Assembly: GCA_000708835.1 (NCBI GenBank)
Contig: DF237731.1
Coordinates: 1-33,436 of the forward strand
From: Klebsormidium nitens
Lineage: Eukaryota > Plantae > Klebsormidiophyceae
Length of the DNA stretch: 33,436 bases
Direction: 5' to 3'
Shown: in pieces, positions 2,172 to 19,951 of the stretch
Numbering within the stretch: the stretch's first letter is position 1
How the letters are laid out: each line of letters starts with the position of its first letter
Translations under genes and position numbers: made by a program
The notes under the pieces: model-generated
Seen by the model: the letters and a program-made list of their open reading frames with translations, nothing else
The model's database searches: none
What the model was told of the DNA's origin: nothing

Positions 2172-7390
<5,219 letters not shown>

Positions 7391-9520
7391 GGTACTGCGT
7401 CCCGACACTTGTTCCCCACAGTGGATCGGAGCTTCGCTTGTGCTGGCAGGCGGAGAGCTGCGGCAGAGCAATGGGTCACAGCGGGGACACCCGATCAGGA
7501 CGGCGCAGTGGCAGAGGCCACAGCGAGCCAAGGCAAGACGGCGTCCGCTCCGCAAGCGAGAACGATAAAACGAAGATGGCCGCAAAACGGGAGTCAGCAA
7601 TCCGAACAGCAATGAACAGCTAGCTTTCGCCAGCAGGTTGGATTGGCAGCGAAACTCCCTTAGAACAGCGAAACTCCCTCGACTTGCAAGCAACCTAGGT
7701 AGTCCTAGTTGAACTTGCAGTGCTTGCTTCTTCCTGAATCCTGGAAGAGCACGAGCTGACGGACACTGACAGTAGCCTATCGGCGTAGGCGGCAGATTGT
7801 GCACTCTGCAGTGTGCACTGTGCATGCCAATTTGCAATTTGCCACTAGTGCATGGACTGCGGCGTGCGCAGTGACTGACGGTGCATAATGCGTCGCACGG
7901 AGAGTACGAGCAGCGGCATTCACCAGCGTTTGCATGTGATTGGTCGATCGAGTTTCAGAGCCTGGCGCGTCAGACATGCTGAGGTCATATATGACATTTG
8001 GCGTGATAACACAGTAGCAAATAATGAAAGCTGACGTCGGCATGGCGCCCCTTTCCCTCGGGGCCATCTTGATCCGGACTCACATGGACGGACGGTCACT
8101 CTAGTCTCACTGGACTGGCCGCGCCCCGTCCAATTAGGGACTCTGGACTGATCAGGGCGGGGATTGCAGGGCCAAGGCCCAATACTACGTCCTACTCACG
8201 ATTAGTGATCCGGCCTAGCTTTTATAGTCTTGCATATATGGCATGAGTATGATAGTACTGTAGCAGCAACGGTAGTCCATCAAGGTCATGCATATATATT
8301 GACTGGGAAAGCTCAGGAGCGGGCGCGTTTGGAGTACTGATGTGCGAAGGTGCTGTCGACTCCCCCGCCTGCACTCGCTCCGCCGCGGGCGCACCTCGTC
8401 TGATCCTCTCAGGATCCTGACTCATGAGGTAGGCGGCGGCATGGCTACGGTGGCTTCAACTTTCAGACAATATTCTGAATCAAGCTGATCTGTATGGCAC
8501 AAATCTTGCCCTTTCTTTACTTATCTGGCCGAGCCTTCCTCCAAATCTTGACCAGTTGATTCAGAACGAGTTCAGAACGGTCTTTTAAAGTTTCCAGCCT
8601 GTGAGACGAAGTCTTCAAAGTCTTACTCTAAGCTTCGTACCGTAGATTGCGAAAAGCCAGAAAAGCAACGTAACAGTGCCCTCGAGGCGCTCTGAAGCTC
8701 TGAGCCTTCAATTTAGAGCGGCGGCTGCAGCTTCCTGGACCTTTCATATATTGGGTTGTCAGTGCCAATCCGTCAATACTAGTCGGCGACTGGATCACTG
8801 TCGTCTTGGCCCGGCCCCGGCCCGATCAACAGGCGTTGCAGTGCTTCTTGACTCGACTTTCAAAGACGGGCGACGTTACAAGCACGTTACAAGTTGGCAA
8901 GATTTTGGAATCGTGACTAGACGGCTTGGACAGAGACGATTGGCTTCCCGAGCTGGCCATCATCGAATTCGGGCCGCCGCGCAGCAAAGGCTCGAGACGC
9001 TGCAACCTGAGACCGTGGTGACACCATTCAATTATCCGCTGACTCTAACCGTCAACAAGTTTATCCTACTTGCAACCTACTTGCAATCAAGACACACCGT
9101 TTATGATTATGTTTACGGGTCGGACTCTCCTATCTGTCCTATAATGAGCTAGCGCTCCCATCGAGCTTGAACCATTGCGGTCCCTCCTGGTGGCCTCCCA
9201 CTGCTACTTTCGGCCCCATCTAGTCCAAGATGACATGATGGACTGGACGGTTCATTGTGGACTTGCAGCACATTTCGCTCGAGGCCAGTGTAGGAGGTGT
9301 CTGAACTTTAGGCTGGGCATCTGTTTGCCAACGTGTGCCGACAGGCTTGTGTACCGCTTGTCTACGCCCGTAGTAGAATAATCTGTGTGATCAAGTGGCA
9401 ATGGGCGTTAATCAGCATTCTCCAAGTTTGCCGATCCACTTTAAATCATACAACTCAAGCTCGCGTTTGTGTACTAGTATGCACAATCCACAGCTGCACG
9501 GACGTTGTCAGCAATATATA

Positions 9521-9797
9521 GGCCTATCCTGGGCCCGGAGGTTGCCAAAGTTGCCCGCGACGTTGCGCGACTTTCCGCGATTCTGCGCGACTTTCCGCGA
9601 CTGCTCCGCGACTTTGTTTCGCGATCTTCGCGACTTTCATCGAAACCTTACAAAGCTTTGACAAACATGTTTTCAAGAATGATTTGCATTTAGATATTTG
9701 CAGATCTGCGCGACGTTCCGCGACTTTCCGCGACTTTGCGCGACTTTCGTCCGCGACTTTCACCGCGACTCTGCGACCTCCGGGCCCAGGATAGGCC
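9521..9797. mobile_element. MITE (non-autonomous DNA transposon), 277 bp
   Basis: Perfect 22-bp terminal inverted repeats GGCCTATCCTGGGCCCGGAGGT (9521-9542) and ACCTCCGGGCCCAGGATAGGCC (9776-9797), each flanked by TA (9519-9520, 9798-9799). No coding capacity; about 14 internal CGCGAC(T/G)TT-like repeats. Superfamily is uncertain: the TA duplication suggests Tc1/mariner, the GGCC termini resemble PIF/Harbinger-Tourist. Confidence 0.9.
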
Positions 9798-9929
9798 TAA
9801 TATTTAGTCCTTGAAGGTCGTTCCCACCTATTCAGGCGAGTCGACAGATTACTTGTTGTCAAGAAACACCCCAAAGCCATGATCCATCTTCAACGGCGTG
9901 CATTTCTTCATCGATCATGACTGTCAACC

Positions 9930-10556
9930 AGGCTTCAGACGTTTTTGCAACGAGCTGGCGGTCTGCGTTGTCATTAAGGGGCAATCAACTCATTATAGCC
10001 TAACTCAACATCATAGAATCGATGCACATGCACAGTCTTCAAACTTCTATGCAGCCCGCCGGCTTTTGATGAAGGATCATTGCCCATCATTGCCATTAAC
10101 GTCTTGCAACACCATTTGTAGAATAGTAGAACACTGACGAATAGATAAATGCTAACAAGCAGTAGTCGTGATCTCCAAAATTACGATCGCGCATGTTTCA
10201 AGGCCTCGAGTTGGTTCCACGTACTGCTTCAATATTGATGGCGCACTGCAAGCTAAGAAAATCGCGCGGATGTTTTGTAAGAATTTTGTTCTCGAATGGC
10301 AGAGAACGTTTTGCGCTGGCCAAGTCACTGCCAAGCCTACAAGCGGAGTGTCATGCATCTGAAAGAAGAGCCATTGAATGCAATCATGTAAGGGTACCGT
10401 CACTATCCGGTAAGGTGTTCTAGATCGAGGCACCTGTGCGAGAAGGTCGCCAGGGCCTCCCCATTCCCCGCCCTGTTGTTCTATCATTGACAAAGGCCCG
10501 ATCCATTTATACACCAGTTGAGCTGAATTCCAGGCATTTTGCGCCGTCTTATTCAC
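9930..10556 (-). mobile_element. Possible decayed Ty3/gypsy pol fragments
   Basis: ORF 10556-10152 contains QLVYKWIGPLSMIEQ (like the integrase C-terminal KW.GPF motif) and MHDTPLVG...NIRAIFLACS (like the integrase H2C2 zinc-binding region). A stop-riddled frame near 10080-9930 reads RLCMCIDSMMLS*...LPL, reminiscent of RT LRMCIDYRxLN. The motif order is not canonical and the similarity was judged by eye only. Confidence 0.35.
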
Positions 10557-11614
10557 CTCTCCAGTCCTCGTATGCCCGTTTCCAGAACCAGTGCATCATC
10601 GATAGAACGGCATAAACAATTAGCGTGTCCGGCTATGCGTATACCGTAAAAAGCAAGCTGGGCCGGGCTTCGCCCGGCGGTCACAAAGCCTGAATTTCTG
10701 GCATGCAAGGCGGCCCCCCGCCCTCCCTCATGAGTTGGCCAGATGAAGCTGCAAGCCCTGGCCCCTGGCCTTCGAGGGCCGGGGTGCCACTCAAGCTAGG
10801 CAAAGTAATTGAACCCTAGATCCTAAGATCAAAGCTGATTTGGGCAGCGCATGTGAGTATTCAACATACATGATCCAACATATTGCCGGCCATGCCCTGG
10901 CCGCGGGCCAACTTGGCAATACTGATTCACTTCAAGATCCACTAGAATGCACAGAACATGTATCACTACCATGCAGGCCGCCGGTTCAGCATGATTCAGT
11001 TGGGTCATAAAGTCACGCGTATCCTATGAGGCATCTGGCTCGAGAATCTTTGATTGCTCAGCCGGCAAGCGTACAAGCAGGCTTGCCCGTCTACTACAGA
11101 AGCATATACATGTTAGTTCTTCCATGAAAGCTAGGACGCTACATCTACCCTCATGGGCTTGAGGATGTGACGGTATATAAGGCCGGAAAGTCTTGTGCAT
11201 GTGGGAAATTTTATGATTGGCACGAGATGGTACACTAGTGACGCCAGGTCGAACTCGAATTGACATCCACACCAGCGCATTTTGCAGGATGATTTGAAGC
11301 CACGGACTGACATCAATCGTATCATCGACGAGCCAGAAAAGAATGTAATGCACTCAATGATGCAAAGATGCTAAAACCCCTCGCAATTAGTGAGATCAAT
11401 GCATAAGAACTTCAGCACATGGATTTCAATGACAAGCTGCAGATTGGACCAGGCTCGACGCACCGGTCGCATTCTGACGATTGTTTCCCATCGACCCACG
11501 CGTCATGCCCACGAACTACCAGATGGCATGGACGTGAGGATTTGGCCTTGACAATATGCGCTTGCACTTGTATGCACAGTATGGTACACAACGATCCCGA
11601 AGCATAAGGCAGCA

Positions 11615-14600
11615 TCACACTGTTCGGAACAGTTCGCGCATCTCCGGGGAGGAGGGGCTGAGCTGTTCGCTGGGGTAGCACTGCGCGAGCAGCGCCTCCA
11701 GGTCCTCGTACTGCGCCAGGAACTCCTCCTTGGCCTTGTCCCAGAGGCTGGGCAGCAGGTCGTCCGCGGTCAGGTGCTTGGCCATGCGCTTGTACATGCC
11801 GCCCAGCTGCTTCTCCACCTGCACACCACACGCACCACCGCCTCAGGCCCCTGGCACGGCGCACACACCGCACGCGACCGCCGCAGCGCACGCCACGCCC
11901 CAGCGGGGCAGCACGAGACCAAAGGCAGGGCGGGGGCGCAGCTCACCCCGGCGAGCGTGCTCTTGAGCAGCTTGCGCAGGTCCGCCTTGCTGAAGCCGGG
12001 CGAGAAGGGCACCTGCAGCAGCGGCGGGGGAGCAGCGCGCGTCAGCTGACGGACAGCGGAATTGGGGCAGGGCGGAGCGAGGGGCGAGCACGGCCAACCT
12101 GCGGCGGGCATGGCCACAAGACACCCCGGGTGATCTTTGAGAGGGACTCCGGTCGGGGCAGCCAGCGGTCTCTGATACCCGGTCAACGAAAGAGCACAAA
12201 AGCGTCGCGGCAAGCCGGGCAAGACGTTGGAGGCCTTGACAACCGATCCCAAGGAAGAAGTCCAGTCCTGATTGGTTGATAAGGGCGAAGCAGTCTTGGT
12301 GGGATAAGGGGCGCCAGCCGGCTACTGCCTTTGTTGCAGGAAAGAGGGGGGGCTGTCATTGCGCCCCCCCGCCAGGCTGGTACCTCTGCGCGTCCGCCTC
12401 AATAGTCGGGCAGCGCTGGCCGCTCGGTGGGGCGCAGTGCGGCAGGAGACGAGGGGGGGGGCTCACCTCCTCGGGGCGGACGTCGAGGGCCTTGATGCGC
12501 TCGCCGAACTGGAACAGCTTCCCGAATTGCTGCACCACCCACCCGCCCGGGCATCAGCTGCCGCGCAGGGAACACCGCACGCAGCACGCAGCAGACATCA
12601 CACAGAGCAGCGGCAGAGAGCAGGGCCGTGACGAAGAGCGGGGCTGGGGGGGGTGGCCCTCACGTAGGCGATGGCCGCGTGGACGTAGTCGGCGCAGGCC
12701 TGCTCGTAGGCGTCGCTGGCCTGCTGGTAGAAGACGGCGAGGGCGGGCACGCTGTTGGCGAGGTCGAAGGTGCTGTTCTGGAACGCGGCGTAGTTCTCGA
12801 GCAGCAGGATCGGCGCGTGCTTGGGGTCCGCGGCGGCGATGCGGTGCAGCACGGCGAACATGGTGCCCACCAGCCGCTCGTACGCGCCGTCCACCGCGTC
12901 GCGCGCGCCGCCCTGCACCAGCTGCTCCATGCGACCCGCCAGCAGCGCAAAGCGCGGGATGTACGGCAGCACGCCCGCCTGCTTCAGCCCCTTATCGTAC
13001 CGCTCGATCTGGTGCGTCACCTCCTCGATGAACTGCGCGCACGGGCAGAGAGGCGCGCGTGGGGAGCAGGACGCAGACGGGACATCCGAGCCTGGTCATC
13101 CTTGATGCATTGGTGGCATTGGGTGCATCTCCGTCTTGCAATCGCTTTTGCCCTCTGGCCACACCATGGATGCCAGCCGCAGCAGGTCGACGCCGGCCGG
13201 AGGGGCGCACTTTTCCCCGGCTGATCCGGTGTGGGGCGCGCACCTTGGCCCAGCTGGCCCGGATCCTGTCGGCGCAGTCGGCGAGGAGCTGCGCGATGGC
13301 GGGGCTGCCGTGGTCGGCGGTGCCATGGGAGGCGAGCCAGGCCTCGGTGATGCCGTCCAGCGTGATGGCCTGCACCGCGTCCAGCCGGCACGCCCAGTCC
13401 ACCAGCCCCACGAAGTCCTCCGACAGCCCCGCCACCAGTGCGCCCTGCCCCGCCGCCAGCGCCGCCTGCTCCGCCACGCCGCGCGCCACCACCACTGCAC
13501 GCACCACGCCCACCGCACGCGCGTAAGCGGGCCAGGCAGAGTGCGACCAGGGGGCAGAGCAGGGCAAGGGGGCGGCCACACAGGCGCCGGCCCTGCCGCC
13601 TGCTGGCTTGATCAAGCCATAGGGGTGGGAGGGGGGGTAAGCCCTCACCAGTCTTGCCATCAGGGGCGGCAGGCGCGTCGGTCTCGTCGTCGGAGAGGTC
13701 GATGTTGAGGGAGTCACTGCGCGTGCGGCTGGGCGCTTCCACGTCGAAGCACATGAAGCCCGCAAAGAAATTGCTCTGCCACACCCGGCCACAGCGCGGC
13801 CGTTAGGCGGTGCCGATGCGGGGGGAGGATGCGAGCAGACATGGGGCCGGCAGCACAGGAGGCATGCGTAAGCAAGGACGGGAGCAGGTCAAGTGGCGTG
13901 CACCATGCCCGGATGCCAACGCGATGCCACCACCCAAGCCCGCATGGCGAGTGAGAGCACCCCGGGAAGGCAGAGACTGGAGGGTGGCTAGCGCCCGGGC
14001 CCTGCACACGCACCTCGTCGACGATGAGCGGCACGAACGTGCGCAGCATAGTAGTGTAGGCCTCCCCTGCGGGCGAAAGCGCGGGCCCCCCCGTGCCGTT
14101 GGCGGCCCCCGCCAGGTTCTCCAGCCACGAGTTGGTCGTGCGCACCAGCTTGCTGCTGGCGCGCAGCTCCTCCGCAAACGCGCGCGCCTGCACATGCCGC
14201 CCGTGCGCCGCGCCTCAGGCCACGCCAAGCAGGGGCACCCCAGGCCAGAGGACAGCGGCACAGGAGGGAGGGAAGCCACATGGACGGCGCACGGAAGAGG
14301 GGAGCGGGCGGGGCTCACCTCGCGTCGCAGGAGGCTATTCAGGGAGTGACAGTAGGCCTGGCGCAGGGGCGGCAGGCACGCGGGGTCCAGCTCCTGCACC
14401 ACGCACCAGCCACGGCCGCCAGTCAGCCCAGCAAGCAGCACCGCAGCAGGGGGCGGCCCCTGGCGCGTCAGGCAAGCAAAAGCGAGAGCCGACGCAGGGC
14501 TTGCTGACAGGGCAAGCCGCGAGGGGGCGGCGCCGGCACAGAGCAGGGGGCGCAACAGCGGCGGCGGACCTTGAGGTGCTGCAGCAGGGGCGCGTAGGCG

Positions 14601-17107
14601 CGGCAGCGATAGCGCAGCTCCGAGTGGTCTGGCCGCTTGAGGGCGCCGCGCTGGGAGAAGGCGGCCCGGTTGGCCAGCAGGGGGTCGGCAATGGCGGCGA
14701 GGTAGGTGCGCAGGAAGTCGGTGGCACGGCGCACCCACGTGCTGCGCAGCCGCTCTAGCTCCGCGCGCTTCTCGCGCACCGCCTGCATGCCGGCGTACTG
14801 GGCGGGGAGCGCAGGGGGCTCCAGCGCGGCGCGCGCCTGCGTGAGCCAGCGCGCAGCCTCCATGTTCTGCGCCATGCACGGCTCCTCAAAGGGTCCCCCC
14901 AGCAGCAGCGAAGAGAACTCGGGGGGCACGCGCAGGCGGGCCAGCAGCGCCGCCAGCTCCGCCAGCAGCGCGCCGTTGTTCTCCGCCTGCTGCTCCAGCC
15001 GGTTGTTGCGCAGCTCAATCTGGCACACGCACACGCGGCAGGTAGGCACGCATGGAGGCCGCGGAAAGACACACATGACCGGGGCTTCACTCCCGACCAC
15101 TTCACGCAGGTGTGGAAAAAATGCGGCAAGGTGCGGACCACAAGAGTTCCAAAGAGCAGGGCACCAAAACTTGTCGAGTTCCTGTGCGAACCGCAGGTTG
15201 CCCTCGTCTTGGCGACAAGCGGGTCAACCAGCAGACTCAATCACAACACTTTGAGGCTGCCCGGGGCCGCCCGACCATGGAGAGTGCGAGCGGGAGTCCC
15301 CAGCAGCCACGCCCAAAGGGCAGCCCTGCTCCCTGCCTGCCCGCGCGCTCACCGCCTCAATGTCCTCGCGCATGTGGCGCAGCTTGGTGTTGAACACGGC
15401 CAGCGTCTCGTCCATGTCGTCCGCGCGCCCGGCCGCCTCGTCCAGCGCGGCCAGCACCGCGTCCACCAGCGGCTCGCTTTCCAGGATTGCGTGCACGTTG
15501 GCCGCCTCCAGCGCCGCCAGCTCGCGCCGGAGCCGCTCGCTGAACGCCTCCGCCTGCCCGATGCCCAGCGTGTAGCTGCCCAGCAGCGCGGCCATGCCCG
15601 CCTCCTCTTCCGCGCTCACCAGCGCCTCCGCGGGGCCCACGCCCACCAGCGCCGCCGCGCCGCCCTCCGCGCCGCCGCCCACCGCCACGCCCACCCCCGC
15701 CACCATGGGCGGGCCCAGCTCGGGCGCCCCGGCGGGCAGCGGGGCAGCGTGCGCCTGCGGTGGGGGGGGGACAAAAGGAGAGGGCCTGAGGCACACCGCG
15801 TACACAAGCAGGGCGGGCCAGCAAGGGGAGTGGCGCAGCAGGCCGCCTGAGGCACACTGTAACCAGTCAGGTGGGGCAGGAGAGGAGAGGGGGGGGACTG
15901 ACCTGGGCCCAGAGCGCCATCTCCACAACGTCGAGGCCCACGACGACGGGCAGCTTGAGGCCATTCTCTCGACAGAGGCGCAGCAAGGTAACCACCAGCA
16001 GGTTCCTGCACGCACGCACACCGCGCACAGTGAGGGAGCAGGCAGACCCCGCAAGCGCCAACCAAAGGGGGCACACAAGAAGAGATGCGGCCACTGAGAG
16101 GGCCGGCCAACGGAGGGAGGCGGGAGCGCACCTGTCATCCGGCGTGCGCGCAGTCCACTGTGGCACGGGGATCCCTGGTTTGGCATTGTCAAATCTCTGC
16201 ACAAAAGGGCAGGGGCGGACGACGGTGAGGAAGGGCACCAAAGGGGCAGGCACCGGCCTCGCAGGGAGTCCCACCGAAGCGGAGTTGGCGCTTGGCCACC
16301 CAGCCGACAGTATAGCGGCGAAGCACAGGGGCACGGGCGCTGCAAAGGGACTGAGCGCCATTGAGAGAAAAGGGGGCAAAGGAAGGATGGTGTACCAGGA
16401 AGAAAGAAAGGGCGGCCGCATCTCCGGGTAGCGCCTCAATCTTGACAAGGTGCTTCAGCTTGTACGTCTTGGACACCTGCACGGGCGCGCACCGGCGTCA
16501 GCAGCGCCCACGTGGAGCGGCCCAGGACCCGAGCAGGCGGCAAGGAAGCAGTCGGAAGGAAGCACAGGGGTGCTCCGCCTCCCACAGCGGTCACTCTCTG
16601 CAATGTGGTTGAGGCAAGGTGGCGGCAGTGCTTGCCTGCAGCCCCGCATTGCTCTGTTTGATGACGTGCAGGTTGACTTTGAAGCGCTGCGTCGCCGGGG
16701 AGCGCTTGGCTGCACACCCAGTCAGCACGGGACAGTCATGGAAAAGGGGCAACACACGACAGCATGGCGCACCAACAAAAGGGACTTCTCCGCATCCTTG
16801 GAGCTAATAGCAACTCATTGACGCCACACCGCCCCGTCAATTCCGAATGCACGTCCTGGCCAATTGCACCGCGGTGCAGCTGCGGGGATGGCTGGGCAGG
16901 CGGCCCGTGCGCAGGCGAGCTGGCGTGCTGACCTGTGACGGCGAGCACGCGCGGCTTGCTGGTCACCCGGTTCCTGCGCACGCTGAGGTTCCAGGCGGAC
17001 GCGGGCGCGCTCTTGGCCAGGCGCACCGCCGTGACCACGCTGCTCTCGGACGCCGCAAACAGCGCCTCCACCGCGGCCACCAGGCCGCCGTCCGCAGCGC
17101 CAGCCAT
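11615..17107 (-). CDS. SEC3: Exocyst complex component SEC3 (plant type), 15 exons, 892 aa
   Basis: Exons (minus strand): 17107-16933, 16709-16636, 16476-16396, 16196-16132, 16005-15903, 15754-15353, 15019-14570, 14393-14319, 14187-14014, 13775-13649, 13494-13244, 13032-12664, 12529-12467, 12012-11947, 11818-11615; total 2679 nt. N-terminal KPRVLAVT...[10 protein letters not shown]...[14 protein letters not shown]...[13 protein letters not shown], central [15 protein letters not shown]...[23 protein letters not shown] and C-terminal MYKRMAKHL...[14 protein letters not shown] match land-plant SEC3 as recalled. Intron 2 needs a GC donor. Confidence 0.95.
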
Positions 17108-17157
17108 GGCGCGCCCCGGCAGGAGCAGGCACGAGCAGGGCGGGTCAGAGGAGCGGA

Positions 17158-17178
17158 TCAGAGGCCAGGCCCGGCCAT
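17158..17178 (-). promoter_or_regulatory. Short upstream ORF (MAGPGL*) before SEC3
   Basis: GCCATGG context at 17178, TGA ending at 17158, out of frame with the SEC3 ATG at 17107. Confidence 0.4.
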
Positions 17179-17755
17179 GGCAATCAGAATCTGACCCTCG
17201 GGCCCTTCTCGGGCCGTGAACTTGAAGTAGGTACGTTGAGCTCAGCGAGGGAAGTGCAGACGCCGGCCGGAGCCTGAGGTGGTCATGCGCAGGGAGACGA
17301 ACTTAGGGCCCGGCGCCGAGCTGGCGGCCGCGCCCTGCCCGGCGGGCCGCCCGGTCCAGACTCCGCAACCGACGGTCCGACCCCTCAATGTTTTGCTCAT
17401 GAGCACCTCGCGAGTCGCTTCTCTAGTTCGGCGCACCACGTCACCAGGACTAACGCAGCGCGGTACGGCCCGTGGGACACCGTACGCGGACCGTGGTACC
17501 GTGACGTGACCTTCCCGTACCCTGCTGCTTCAGGGCTTCGCTGACTTCACGATGCACTCACGACTCACGAGACACGAGTGGTTGCGTCGGCTGAGAGTCT
17601 CTGCCTCTGACTCTGACTCACAGTCTGCAGCGTAGAGAACCCTGCAGGCTCCTTGAGCAGCATTCGACCGCAAGTGAGCGTGTGTTGCCTGGCATGCCAC
17701 CGCTTGCTCTTCCAGCGACGTGCTTGCTCGAGGTAGCAGAGGGGAGCGGCTCAAG

Positions 17756-17791
17756 ATGGCCGGGGGGTTGCCTGTGTCCCAGCAAGAGTAG
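17756..17791 (+). promoter_or_regulatory. In-frame upstream ORF (MAGGLPVSQQE*) before the SnRK2-like gene
   Basis: AAGATGG context at 17756, TAG at 17789-17791, 63 nt upstream of and in frame with the ATG at 17819. Inclusion in the transcript is not demonstrated. Confidence 0.5.
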
Positions 17792-17818: not shown

Positions 17819-19951
17819 ATGACTAGTCCTCTTCAGACGGTGACGCCAAGCTCGTCTGACAGCGACGCTTCGGTCCTGTCTGTTGGAAAGGTGGTTGGGG
17901 GTGAGGGGTGGAAGCAGAGCGCGGGGAGAGGCCGGGCCGGGTCTGGGCTAACAGCCAGCAAGGAGCGCGCAGGGCGGCCTCTTGAAGTGCTTGCGCCGGA
18001 GCTACGCGAGCAATACGAGGATACAGGGGCGGTGCTGGGCAAGGGTACGTACGGGGTGATCCGCCTGCTTAAGGACAAGCGGAGCGGCACGCATGTGGCG
18101 GCACGGTTCATTCCACTGCGGCTGTGGTCGCGGCAGAATGAGAAGGAGATCATTCTCATGGCGCAGCTGCAGCACCCGTGCATGGTGCGCTTCCAGAAGG
18201 CCGTCCTGACAAGTGCGGATCTAGTGGTCATCACCGAGGCCTATGGGATGGGGAACACGCTGATGCGCTTTGTGGACAAGAAGATGCTGACAGAGTCACA
18301 GGCAAGGTAAGGCGTGTGCTGGTTCAGGCCCTCGGCCAGATTTGTGAAATGGTGCACCTTTTTACCAGGTTTGGTTGGTTCTGCTATGACTTAGTTTTTG
18401 TTGCGCCAGATCTTGGTTGTGGCCCATGTCCTCTTGCGCCCTCCAGCCTGTGTGAGCTTGTATTGCTGGTGGGGTAGGGTATGGAAACTGGTAACCTTTA
18501 AGCGGCAGACTTTGATGCTGTACAAAGGGAACTGTTTTGGGACGGACGGTTCGTTGAAAAGCAAGTGGAGTCCTGCAGCTGGGGTAAGAAAGAGGGACTA
18601 ATGACACTGTCGTGCCAAAGAGTTTTAGATGGGTGCACAAGAGCAGACCCAGCCTCGGGCTATGTCGGATGCTGACTGTAGAGCAGTCGCGTGTGTGCCC
18701 AGCGCCGCCCCGCGCAGCTCTGACGCGGGTGCCTCGTGGGGGGCTGTCAGGTGGCGGGTCTCTTGGAAGCCCCTCTTCCTGAGCGGCCTGTCGGCTGCAC
18801 ATGCCAACAGTATAACCCTGTGTGGAACACCGTGAGCAGAAGCATATTTGCCTGGAGCCAAGAGCCTCCCCTTTGCCATGCGGAGCTCTGCAGGGGCTCA
18901 GGTGTCTTGGCGGTACAACTTACCCCAGATCTGTCCGATGGCCTTTCCACCACCTGCTGCTTACTGGTTCCCATGGGAGTTGTAATGTGTTTGTTGCCAT
19001 TCCCCGGCAGAAACTTGGGGGAGTGTTGCTGGCGCGCGTGGGTGTTGTATGGGTCCGCCCTCTCTGTGGCGCTCCTGGTGGGCATGCACCAGGGACGCCA
19101 CAGAGGGAAGGCCATCACCGCATTGTGGCCCTCTTCCGGCATTGGGTTTCTGCCCGTCGTCAGGTGTCAGGAGATCAGGTGGCGAATTGAGCACGTATAC
19201 TTGGGACATGTGTTCACGTCCTTTTCAGCAGCCGCGTAACAGCGGGTCCCCTTCCTCCCCCTGGCCTGGGCGCTCACGGGCGCGCGGCTGTGCGCTGGAT
19301 TGCAGGTACCTGTTCCAGCAGCTGGTGGCGGCCACGGAGCTGTGCCACGAGGTGGGGGCCAGCGGGCGGGACCTCAACATGGAGACGGTCATCCTGGGCA
19401 AGGCCAACCCGCCGGGCCTCAAGATGCTGCCCCTGGGGAACACGCGCACGGCGCTCATGCGCGGCTCGGAGCAGGCCGTGCTGCCCAGCAGCATCTACGC
19501 AGCGCCGGAGATCTTGCAAACGCGGGGGCCGGGTGCGGAGGGGGCGGTGGAGCAGCACGACCGAGCGGAGTTGGCCAATGGGAAACAAGCGGACGTGTGG
19601 TCGCTGGGGGTAATCCTTGCAGCGCTGGTCTTTCACACATACCCCTTCGCAGACAAAGGCCCCGAGAAGAACGTGCAGCGCATGTTCGAGCGCATCACGG
19701 CGGGAGAATATCAAATCCCAGCCAACGTGCAAGTGGATGATAGTTTAAGGGATCTCTTAGATAGAATATTCCAAATCGACCCCAACAAGCGGATCACGTT
19801 GCAGCAAATTAAGGAGCACGAGTGGGTGAAGGTAAACATGCCACCGAAGCTGCGGAGAAGGTATCAGCCAGTACTCGCAGAAGGTGTGCAGAGCTTTACG
19901 GATGTTTTGATGGTGCTGAAAAGTGCGAGGGCTGCGTCAAACAATTCTTGA
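17819..19951 (+). CDS. SnRK2-derived protein kinase-like protein, predicted pseudokinase, 2 exons, 377 aa
   Basis: Exon 1 is 17819-18306 (donor AG|GTAAGG) and exon 2 is 19306-19951 (acceptor TTGCAG|G); phase-2 junction, intact frame. It aligns by eye to SnRK2 throughout: GKGTYGV, KEIILM..LQHPCMVRF, ARYLFQQLV, YAAPE, ADVWSLGV, YPF, DLLDRIFQIDPNKRITLQQIKEHEWVKVNMP and SnRK2-box-like QSFTDVLMVLKSA. Catalytic motifs are degenerate (VAAR, GRDLNMET, PLG). Confidence 0.88.

What the first reader, a model, noticed from the sequence alone, without database searches (positions are those of the whole stretch)
17819..19951. Intact SnRK2-derived pseudokinase: catalytic and activation residues lost, SnRK2 box kept, ABA box absent
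Seen, compared with recalled SnRK2.6/OST1: beta3 VAVK is VAAR (Lys to Arg); CHRDLKLEN is SGRDLNMET (His, Lys and Asn lost, Asp kept); DFG is PLG (metal-binding Asp lost). The 27-residue DFG-to-APE segment aligns without gaps and places Ala at the activating Ser175 position and Pro-Ser at the Gly-Thr. There is an insert of about 15 aa after APE. The Gly-loop (GKGTYG), the alphaC Glu, the whole C-lobe and a SnRK2-box-like helix (QSFTDVLMVLKSA) are retained, and the protein ends before any acidic ABA box. The frame and splice sites are intact, so it looks like a maintained gene rather than a pseudogene. Inference: a catalytically dead scaffold or decoy that might titrate PP2Cs, Raf-like activators or active SnRK2s in an early-diverging streptophyte. 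I know of no described SnRK2 pseudokinase clade, but could not search.
Basis: partly seen in the sequence, partly recalled or inferred. Interest (0 to 1): 0.75.

Follow-up and report, generated by a model that had tools for sequence, protein, structure and literature searches.

The report
Conserved dead SnRK2-family kinase in Klebsormidium
This green alga keeps, transcribes and strongly conserves a copy of a plant stress kinase (SnRK2 family) that has lost four residues needed for catalysis, so it most likely works by binding partners, not by phosphorylating them.

Summary
The window is scaffold DF237731.1 of Klebsormidium nitens. The two-exon gene (17819-18306, 19306-19951, + strand) encodes the annotated 377-aa protein GAQ91421.1.

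- **Lost residues:** beta3 Lys is Arg, catalytic-loop Lys is Asn, catalytic-loop Asn is Thr, and the DFG Asp is Pro. All four positions are invariant in 66-68 other SnRK2-family proteins. The activating serines are Gly and Ala.
- **Kept features:** Gly-loop, alphaC Glu, HRD Asp and a SnRK2-box helix. The protein ends 7 residues after that helix, with no acidic box.
- **Family:** SnRK2.6 scores 155 bits against 97 for SNF1/AMPK. A mixture-model tree puts it inside SnRK2, apart from SnRK1, CIPK, AMPK and MARK (100/100). It sits on a very long stem, and its place inside the family is unresolved.
- **Not a decaying copy:** other Klebsormidium have orthologues with the same substitutions. Spliced transcripts exist. 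dN/dS is 0.05-0.14.
- **Distribution:** a search of 1.84 billion representative proteins found no relative between this clade and ordinary SnRK2s.

The decoy or scaffold mechanism is untested. Loss of the PP2C-targeted serine and the acidic box argues against simple PP2C titration. I found no paper on it. This scan had already noted another SnRK2-like pseudokinase elsewhere in this genome.

The parts
17819..18306 (+). Exon 1: residues 1-162 plus the first two bases of the Arg163 codon. It holds the N-terminal extension and the N-lobe.
   Evidence: ORF and donor AG|GTAAGG read. Pfam Pkinase E 4.9e-09. The product matches P0001. The same junction is seen in intronless transcript contigs L004 and L005 of an orthologue.
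18307..19305 (+). Single intron, GT..AG, 999 bases, phase 2, inside the Arg163 codon.
   Evidence: Orthologous introns at the same codon position in L001, L006 and L008. Intron identity to L008 is 0.76, against 0.95-0.98 at non-synonymous coding sites (pN 0.016-0.048). It lies 5 nt downstream of intron 3 of a canonical SnRK2 gene from Riccia.
19306..19951 (+). Exon 2: last base of the Arg163 codon, residues 164-377 and the stop. It holds the C-lobe, SnRK2 box and tail.
   Evidence: Pfam Pkinase E 1.3e-20. Best solved relatives are SAPK10 and SnRK2.6 at E 4e-27, against AMPK at 5e-18.
17819..17995 (+). N-terminal extension, residues 1-59. It is predicted disordered and has conserved islands (MTSP; GGEGWKQSA at 17897-17923).
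   Evidence: pLDDT below 50 for residues 1-52. It is 53% identical to the distant orthologue, with invariant islands. dN/dS is 0.25 here against about 0.05-0.08 in the domain.
18038..18055 (+). Gly-rich loop GKGTYG (residues 74-79), intact.
18095..18106 (+). beta3 motif VAAR. The ATP-anchoring Lys is replaced by Arg96.
   Evidence: Aligned to VAVK of SnRK2.6. Lys in 66 of 66 family members with a residue there; Arg in all three orthologues.
18146..18148 (+). alphaC Glu110, kept.
   Evidence: Invariant column in A1.
19361..19387 (+). Pseudo-catalytic loop SGRDLNMET (residues 182-190). His is Gly, Asp185 is kept, Lys is Asn187, Asn is Thr190.
   Evidence: The 15-residue segment around it (residues 179-193) is 13/15 identical to the distant orthologue.
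19430..19510 (+). Activation segment PLG...APE (residues 205-231). The DFG Asp is Pro205, the Ser171 equivalent is Gly216, the Ser175 equivalent is Ala220 (19475-19477), and Gly-Thr is Pro-Ser.
   Evidence: Gap-free 27-residue alignment to SnRK2.6. Column counts. It is 25/27 identical to the distant orthologue although residues 211-221 are predicted disordered.
19529..19579 (+). Lineage-specific insert of about 15 residues between APE and alphaF (about residues 238-254). The first half varies and the second half (EQHDRAELAN) is conserved.
   Evidence: Gap columns in the SnRK2.6 alignment. Orthologue comparison. Low pLDDT for residues 241-250.
19889..19927 (+). SnRK2 box (domain I) helix, QSFTDVLMVLKSA, residues 358-370.
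   Evidence: Aligned with the box of 68 family members; Ala370 is nearly invariant. The AF2 helix 360-376 has pLDDT about 87-97. The model superposes on SnRK2.3 and SnRK2.6 out to chain residues 317-319, whereas AMPK alignments stop at model residues 346-361.
19928..19951 (+). Seven-residue tail RAASNNS and the stop. There is no acidic domain II / ABA box.
   Evidence: Zero acidic residues after the box, against a median of 7 in 71 family members. The tail is invariant in all orthologues.

Best explanation
The gene encodes a SnRK2-family pseudokinase that is found so far only in Klebsormidium.

Shown:
- It descends from the SnRK2 family.
- It went through a burst of change, seen as a stem of 2.5-2.9 substitutions per site. 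In that burst four catalytic residues (beta3 Lys, catalytic-loop Lys and Asn, DFG Asp) and both activating serines were replaced.
- Since then it has been under strong purifying selection.
- It is transcribed and correctly spliced in related species.

Inferred:
- It cannot carry out ordinary Mg-ATP phosphotransfer, and acts through protein binding.
- The kept SnRK2 box, alphaC Glu and C-lobe suggest a stable kinase fold. The most conserved parts are the non-phosphorylatable activation segment, alphaD-alphaF and the box with its tail. I take these as the likely contact surfaces.
- My preferred mechanism is that it pairs with, or competes with, the alga's active SnRK2 (KnSnRK2/KnOST1) for shared partners in the ABA-independent osmostress module. 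It would then tune that kinase allosterically or by sequestration.
- The identity of the partner and the sign of the effect are guesses.
For: **Family**
- P0001 against solved structures: SnRK2.6 E 1.9e-44 (155 bits); next best SNF1/AMPK 1e-26 (97 bits); CIPK24 8e-23.
- Careful IQ-TREE (LG+C20) trees put it inside SnRK2 with 100/100 support against named SnRK1, CIPK, AMPK and MARK, and 100/99 in a second sample.
- Foldseek's best matches are all SnRK2.6, SAPK10 and SnRK2.3.
- VIA-align gives Z 29.4, rmsd 2.2 to SnRK2.3 over model residues 55-373.

**Dead by sequence**
-.

**Maintained**
- dN/dS against L008 is 0.137 (exon 1) and 0.064 (exon 2), at dS 0.26-0.36.
- dN/dS against the distant orthologue is 0.05-0.08, with saturated dS.
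- Downstream IQD synteny is conserved.

**Expressed**
- A K. subtile Trinity transcript of 377 aa.
- Intronless 1.4-kb contigs L004 and L005 encoding 378 aa.
- Fragment P0012, which spans the junction.

**Conservation pattern**
- Activation segment 93%, box plus tail 90%, alphaF 100%, against 53-56% in the N-tail and the linker.
Against: - No biochemical test exists. Arg at beta3, the intact Gly-loop, the alphaC Glu and the HRD Asp leave room for nucleotide binding or an unusual activity.
- No transcript of K. nitens itself was recovered; the exact-protein look-up found only the genome contig.
- No partner was tested.
- The SnRK2-box packing rests on an AlphaFold model built from an SnRK2-rich alignment, so it is partly circular.
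- Only four close orthologues are known, so surface conservation is weakly resolved.
Confidence: 0.7

Rival explanations
1. It is an atypical but active kinase. It would use a non-canonical mechanism, for example cation-independent catalysis as reported for CASK (my recollection of the literature, not checked here), or displaced catalytic residues as in WNK.
For: The Gly-loop GKGTYG, alphaC Glu110 and HRD Asp185 are kept. beta3 carries a positively charged Arg. The pseudo-catalytic loop and activation segment remain highly conserved.
Against: Four residues that are invariant in 66-68 family members are lost together. They include the catalytic-loop Lys and both metal ligands (Asn, DFG Asp). 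By my recollection CASK keeps its beta3 Lys and catalytic-loop Lys. Both activation-loop serines are also gone.
Confidence: 0.1
2. It is a PP2C or Raf decoy in the reader's strict sense: a pseudo-substrate that soaks up clade A PP2C or B-group Raf kinases.
For: Two of the three SnRK2.6 residues that contact HAB1 Trp385 have equivalents here (Arg184, Glu189). The alphaG helix is SnRK2-like. The activation segment is the most conserved loop.
Against: The Ser175 equivalent, which is the PP2C target, is Ala. The Ser171 equivalent is Gly. The Ile183 equivalent is Ala. The acidic ABA box that stabilises PP2C binding is absent. Arg184 and Glu189 are general kinase residues, so keeping them says little.
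Confidence: 0.15
3. It is a decaying duplicate or an annotation artefact.
For: It has lost catalytic residues, sits on a very long branch, and has no K. nitens transcript on record.
Against: The frame is intact in at least four genomes or strains, and the splice junction is identical. Spliced transcripts exist. dN/dS is 0.05-0.14 while introns are only 76% identical.
Confidence: 0.02
4. It is not derived from the canonical streptophyte (ABA-type) SnRK2. Instead it comes from an older algal SnRK2-like paralogue line that never had domain II, for example the P0021 group.
For: It grouped with P0021 at 90/89 in one tree. P0021-group proteins also end soon after the box and have a small insert after APE. 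It falls outside the starred canonical clade.
Against: The P0021 pairing disappears when more members of that group are added. The AU test does not reject a clade with the canonical streptophyte SnRK2s (p 0.358). Its single intron lies only 5 nt from canonical intron 3. Long-branch effects are likely.
Confidence: 0.35

Closest known systems
SnRK2.6/OST1 and other canonical SnRK2s (Arabidopsis SRK2E/SRK2I, SAPK10; KnSnRK2/KnOST1 of the same alga, PMC6340887)
   Same: It is the best sequence and fold match. It groups in the same family clade, has a SnRK2-box helix after the kinase domain, has an SnRK2-like alphaG, and has a gap-free activation segment of the same length.
   Different: It is about 30-36% identical. 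It has lost the beta3 Lys, catalytic-loop Lys and Asn, DFG Asp, and the Ser171 and Ser175 equivalents. It has no acidic domain II, a 59-residue N-terminal extension, a 15-residue insert after APE, and one intron instead of eight.
Tribbles (TRIB1/2), CAMK-group pseudokinases
   Same: It is a CAMK-like fold with a degraded metal-binding motif. Tribbles are thought to act as scaffolds (established knowledge). They appear among the hits for exon 2 at E about 1e-13.
   Different: They are far weaker matches than SnRK2 (1e-27). They are an animal lineage. By my recollection Tribbles has a degraded Gly-loop and a COP1-binding tail, whereas here the Gly-loop is intact and the tail is a SnRK2 box. It is not a member.
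Pseudokinase partners of active kinases (STRADalpha-LKB1, KSR-RAF, HER3-EGFR)
   Same: A dead paralogue or relative that keeps an ordered fold and could regulate an active kinase allosterically. This is an analogy for the proposed mechanism (established knowledge, not tested here).
   Different: They are unrelated families, and no interaction has been shown for this protein.
Second SnRK2-like pseudokinase of K. nitens, noted earlier by this scan (s1-324398)
   Same: It is in the same genome and has the same general description: a conserved, spliced, catalytically dead SnRK2-like protein.
   Different: It is a different scaffold. It is not a close paralogue. The word search with exon 2 found only this gene's own clade at E 1e-10 or better. 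The profile-free search showed nothing between 395 and 162 bits. I could not fetch its sequence to compare.

Membership tests
SnRK2 (SNF1-related protein kinase 2; CAMK-OST1L) | The kinase domain groups with SnRK2s to the exclusion of SnRK1/AMPK and SnRK3/CIPK. | tested here: met
   100/100 support in the careful mixture-model tree with named SnRK1, CIPK, AMPK and MARK. 155 bits to SnRK2.6 against 97 to SNF1/AMPK and 84 to CIPK24.
SnRK2 (SNF1-related protein kinase 2; CAMK-OST1L) | Domain I (SnRK2 box): a helix just after the kinase domain that packs on alphaC. | tested here: met
   The Q-S-x-x-[DE]-[IV]-x-x-[IV]-[IL]-x-x-A pattern is aligned in A1. The predicted helix 360-376 superposes on the box region of 3uc3, 3zut and 3uc4. 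The packing is prediction-level only.
SnRK2 (SNF1-related protein kinase 2; CAMK-OST1L) | Acidic domain II (ABA box, or a poly-Asp/Glu stretch). | tested here: not met
   The tail is 7 residues with 0 acidic residues. However, 19 of 71 aligned family members, mostly algal, also lack it.
SnRK2 (SNF1-related protein kinase 2; CAMK-OST1L) | Catalytic residues (beta3 Lys, HRD Asp, catalytic-loop Lys and Asn, DFG Asp). | tested here: not met
   Only the HRD Asp is kept. The others are R96, N187, T190 and P205.
SnRK2 (SNF1-related protein kinase 2; CAMK-OST1L) | Activation-loop serines that are phosphorylated by Raf-like kinases or autophosphorylation and removed by PP2C (Ser171, Ser175 of SnRK2.6). 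| tested here: not met
   Gly216 and Ala220 at these positions in all orthologues.
Canonical streptophyte (ABA-type) SnRK2 clade | Nested within the clade that holds Chlorokybus, Mesostigma, bryophyte and vascular-plant SnRK2s. | tested here: inconclusive
   It falls outside the 99/92 clade in the free tree, but the AU test does not reject holding them together (p 0.358).
Pseudokinase (sequence definition) | A kinase fold that lacks at least one of the VAIK Lys, HRD Asp or DFG Asp. | tested here: met
   The Lys and the DFG Asp are lost, and so are the catalytic-loop Lys and Asn. The fold is confirmed by Pfam, PDB and the AF2 model.
Pseudokinase (biochemical definition) | No phosphotransfer activity; nucleotide-binding class. 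| not testable with these tools
   This needs recombinant protein, thermal shift and kinase assays.

The most novel reading that the evidence does not exclude
Klebsormidium has SnRK2, PP2C-A and Raf-like kinases but no PYL receptor. In this reading it evolved its own regulatory layer for the ancestral ABA-independent SnRK2 osmostress module. The layer would be a dedicated dead SnRK2 paralogue that binds the active SnRK2 or its substrates and sets its activity. With the second pseudokinase noted by the scan, there may be a small set of such proteins. That would be a kinase-pseudokinase pair in a pathway so far described only in terms of phosphatase and upstream-kinase control.
Probability: 0.22. 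Interest if true: 0.75.

Novelty: new variant of a known kind. Interest (0 to 1): 0.55.

Why it matters
SnRK2 kinases are the core of osmotic-stress and ABA signalling. Klebsormidium is a standard model for how that module looked before land plants gained ABA receptors. In the searches of the held paper library I found no description of a catalytically dead SnRK2-family member. A selectively maintained one gives a concrete, testable candidate regulator of the ancestral module. Its partners can be sought by pull-down with KnSnRK2, PP2C-A and ARK/Raf.

It is also a caution for comparative genomics. This protein is annotated simply as a serine/threonine protein kinase, and by an earlier scan note a second dead copy is labelled SnRK2.6. 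Gene counts of "SnRK2" in streptophyte algae may therefore include non-catalytic members.

The limits are its narrow distribution (one genus so far) and the lack of any functional data.

Tried and rejected
1. **K. nitens SnRK2 paralogues:** the word-index searches returned mostly angiosperm SnRK2s and unnamed transcripts. No K. nitens paralogue appeared in the top 120. The tree therefore lacks the alga's own active SnRK2 and the second pseudokinase.
2. **Sister group to P0021:** support was 90/89 in one tree but dissolved when five more members of that group were added. I do not rely on it.
3. **Shared intron position with canonical SnRK2:** the intron is close but not identical. It is 5 nt downstream of intron 3 of the Riccia gene and in a different phase. 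By my rough estimate, one intron would fall within 5 nt of one of eight positions by chance about 8% of the time. This is suggestive only.
4. **Exon 1 alone:** it does not discriminate the family. DAPK1 and SnRK2.6 score alike.
5. **Other multiply-degraded SnRK2-family members among the best 150 hits:** none was clear. Apparent beta3 losses are mostly N-terminal truncations.
6. **Eutrema SnRK2 gene for a second intron map:** it is not on record.
7. **Sequence look-up in the scan's notes:** blank.
8. **Literature:** SnRK2 with pseudokinase, Klebsormidium with pseudokinase, the accession, and kinome surveys gave nothing on this protein.
9. **Exon joining:** Exon-wise searches were made by reference and dN/dS was computed per exon. 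Full-length work used the database protein P0001 returned.
Full report
**What is there**

The window is the whole 33,436-base scaffold DF237731.1 of the Klebsormidium nitens assembly GCA_000708835.1. On the + strand, an ORF starting at ATG 17819 runs into a GTAAGG donor at 18307. A second ORF is entered after the acceptor AG at 19304-19305 and ends at TGA 19949-19951.

I searched the two exons separately by reference and did not join them myself:
- Both exons are Pfam protein-kinase halves.
- Exon 2 matches solved SnRK2 structures best: SAPK10 and SnRK2.6 at E about 4e-27, against AMPK at 5e-18.
- Exon 1 alone is ambiguous.
- A word-index search with exon 2 returned the annotated protein P0001 (GAQ91421.1, "serine/threonine protein kinase", 377 aa) at 100% identity. 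This is exactly the two-exon product.

I used P0001 for all full-length work.

**Check of the observation**

| SnRK2.6 feature | This protein |
|---|---|
| beta3 VAVK | VAAR |
| CHRDLKLEN | SGRDLNMET |
| DFG | PLG |
| Ser171 | Gly216 |
| Ser175 | Ala220 |
| Gly-Thr | Pro-Ser |

- The DFG-to-APE segment is 27 residues and aligns without gaps.
- There are 15 extra residues after APE.
- The Gly-loop and the alphaC Glu are kept.
- In an alignment with 68 other SnRK2-family proteins, the beta3 Lys, catalytic-loop Lys and Asn, DFG Asp and Gly178 are invariant. The three full-length orthologues all carry the replacements.
- The C-terminal QSFTDVLMVLKSA aligns with the SnRK2 box of the family. Only seven non-acidic residues follow it.

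**Family**

- Full-length scores are 155 bits to SnRK2.6, 97 to SNF1/AMPK and 84 to CIPK24.
- I built two careful IQ-TREE trees under LG+C20. One used the best hits of the large search. The other used named SnRK1 (Thlaspi, Kalanchoe, Closterium), CIPKs (NAF domain), AMPK-like and MARK sequences as outgroup. Domain content was checked.
- Both trees place the Klebsormidium clade inside the SnRK2 family with 100/99 and 100/100 support.
- The clade sits on a stem of 2.5-2.9 substitutions per site, and its position inside the family is unresolved. It lies outside the starred canonical streptophyte clade.
- An AU test does not reject joining it to that clade (p 0.358).
- A pairing with an unnamed short-tailed algal group (P0021) at 90/89 vanished when that group was sampled better.
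- "SnRK2-derived" therefore holds at family level. Descent from the ABA-type streptophyte SnRK2 is neither shown nor rejected.

**Structure**

- AlphaFold2 with a 71-sequence alignment gives mean pLDDT 79.5 and pTM 0.79. Residues 1-52 and 211-221 are disordered, and there is a confident C-terminal helix at 360-376.
- Foldseek's top twelve matches are all SnRK2.6, SAPK10 or SnRK2.3.
- VIA-align superposes model residues 55-373 on residues 11-319 of SnRK2.3 (Z 29.4, rmsd 2.2). Alignments to AMPK stop at model residues 346-361. The last helix therefore takes the place of the SnRK2 box.
- This is prediction-level evidence and partly circular, because the alignment is SnRK2-rich.

**A maintained gene, not a decaying copy**

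- Cluster look-ups gave a K. subtile Trinity transcript of 377 aa (97% identical) and a 378-aa orthologue (about 80% identical).
- The 378-aa orthologue lies on two intronless 1.4-kb contigs, L004 and L005. In them exon 1 runs straight into exon 2 at the predicted junction.
- It also lies on genomic contigs L001, L006 and L008, with an intron at the same codon position.
- Fragment P0012 also spans the junction.
- All copies keep R96, N187, T/S190, P205, G216 and A220.
- The IQD gene downstream is syntenic in L006.

Nei-Gojobori estimates, exon by exon:

| Comparison | Exon 1 dN/dS | Exon 2 dN/dS | dS |
|---|---|---|---|
| K. nitens vs L008 | 0.137 | 0.064 | 0.36 / 0.26 |
| K. nitens vs distant orthologue (L001) | 0.082 | 0.053 | saturated |

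The intron is only 76% identical to that of L008. I did not recover a transcript of K. nitens itself.

**Distribution**

A filter-only HMMER search of 1.84 billion representative proteins found this clade's own cluster at 395 bits. The next hit was at 162 bits: a Chloropicon SnRK2-like kinase, 36% identical. No intermediate relatives are on record, so the clade is known only from Klebsormidium-type algae. Among the best 150 hits, no other SnRK2-family member has lost several catalytic residues.

**Mechanism**

What is shown is the loss of four catalytic residues and both activating serines, a kept fold and SnRK2 box, strong constraint, and expression in relatives.

Between the most distant orthologues, conservation differs by region:

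| Region | Identity |
|---|---|
| alphaF | 100% |
| alphaD-alphaE | 94% |
| Activation segment | 93% |
| SnRK2 box plus tail | 90% |
| Linker | 56% |
| N-terminal tail | 53% |

A predicted-disordered activation loop that can no longer be phosphorylated at the canonical sites is nevertheless almost invariant. This points to a binding role.

I infer a non-catalytic protein that binds partners of the SnRK2 module. The most likely target is the active KnSnRK2 or its shared partners.

The strict PP2C or Raf decoy idea is weakened:
- Published work names the Ser175 loop, the alphaG helix, the pocket of Arg139, Glu144 and Ile183, and the acidic ABA box as the PP2C contacts (PMC4333806; PMC8465348).
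- Here the serine is Ala, the Ile equivalent is Ala, and the box is absent.
- Only the generic Arg and Glu remain.

**Comparison with what is known**

- K. nitens has an active SnRK2 that complements moss snrk2 mutants (PMC6340887). A 2026 preprint says it is inhibited by Arabidopsis PP2CA (10.64898/2026.05.21.726866).
- I found no paper that describes a dead SnRK2-family member or this accession. The library holds only open papers and preprints.
- This scan had already noted another conserved SnRK2-like pseudokinase on a different scaffold of the same genome (s1-324398). I could not fetch it. It is not a close paralogue of this one.

**Verdict**

The reading as an intact, selected SnRK2-family pseudokinase is supported. 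The proposed decoy mechanism is open, and in its PP2C form it is disfavoured. It is a new variant of a known kind, of moderate interest.

Noticed in passing
window 18307-19305, compared with L009 (Riccia sorocarpa SnRK2 gene): The pseudokinase's only intron (phase 2, in the Arg163 codon of ...SQAR|YLFQQ...) lies 5 nt downstream of intron 3 (phase 0, ...SEDE|ARFFFQQ...) of a canonical nine-exon SnRK2 gene with exon lengths 144, 75, 102, 54, 93, 93, 105, 99 and 288. It may be a slid remnant of the canonical structure after loss of seven introns, or a coincidence (my rough estimate is about 8%).
   Followed up: partly
window 19928-19948 (residues 371-377): The very C-terminal RAASNNS is invariant in all orthologues. 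It contains a basic R-x-x-S motif of the kind AMPK/SnRK/CDPK-type kinases phosphorylate (my knowledge, not tested). It may be a phospho-acceptor or docking tail.
   Followed up: no
window 17897-17923 (residues 27-35) within the disordered N-terminal extension: GGEGWKQSA is a conserved island in an otherwise fast-evolving, predicted-disordered 59-residue extension that canonical SnRK2s lack. It is a candidate short linear motif.
   Followed up: partly
window about 4340-17790, compared with L006 1081-8185: The Sec3 exocyst gene directly upstream in K. nitens (Pfam Sec3_CC at 15224-16342, - strand) has no detectable counterpart upstream of the orthologue on the 30-kb metagenome contig L006. Yet window 2175-4339 matches L006 29-1081, and the downstream IQD gene is syntenic. 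The upstream flank has therefore been rearranged or has gained about 6 kb.
   Followed up: partly
P0021, P0305-P0309 (Logan, JGI and MMETSP transcripts): This is a group of catalytically intact SnRK2-like kinases of unnamed algae or protists. They end 5-14 residues after the SnRK2 box and have a small insert after APE. They may be a short-tailed SnRK2 subfamily that is not described under that name.
   Followed up: partly
whole window: G+C alternates sharply between about 0.66-0.73 in gene bodies and about 0.47-0.53 in intergenic stretches.
   Followed up: no
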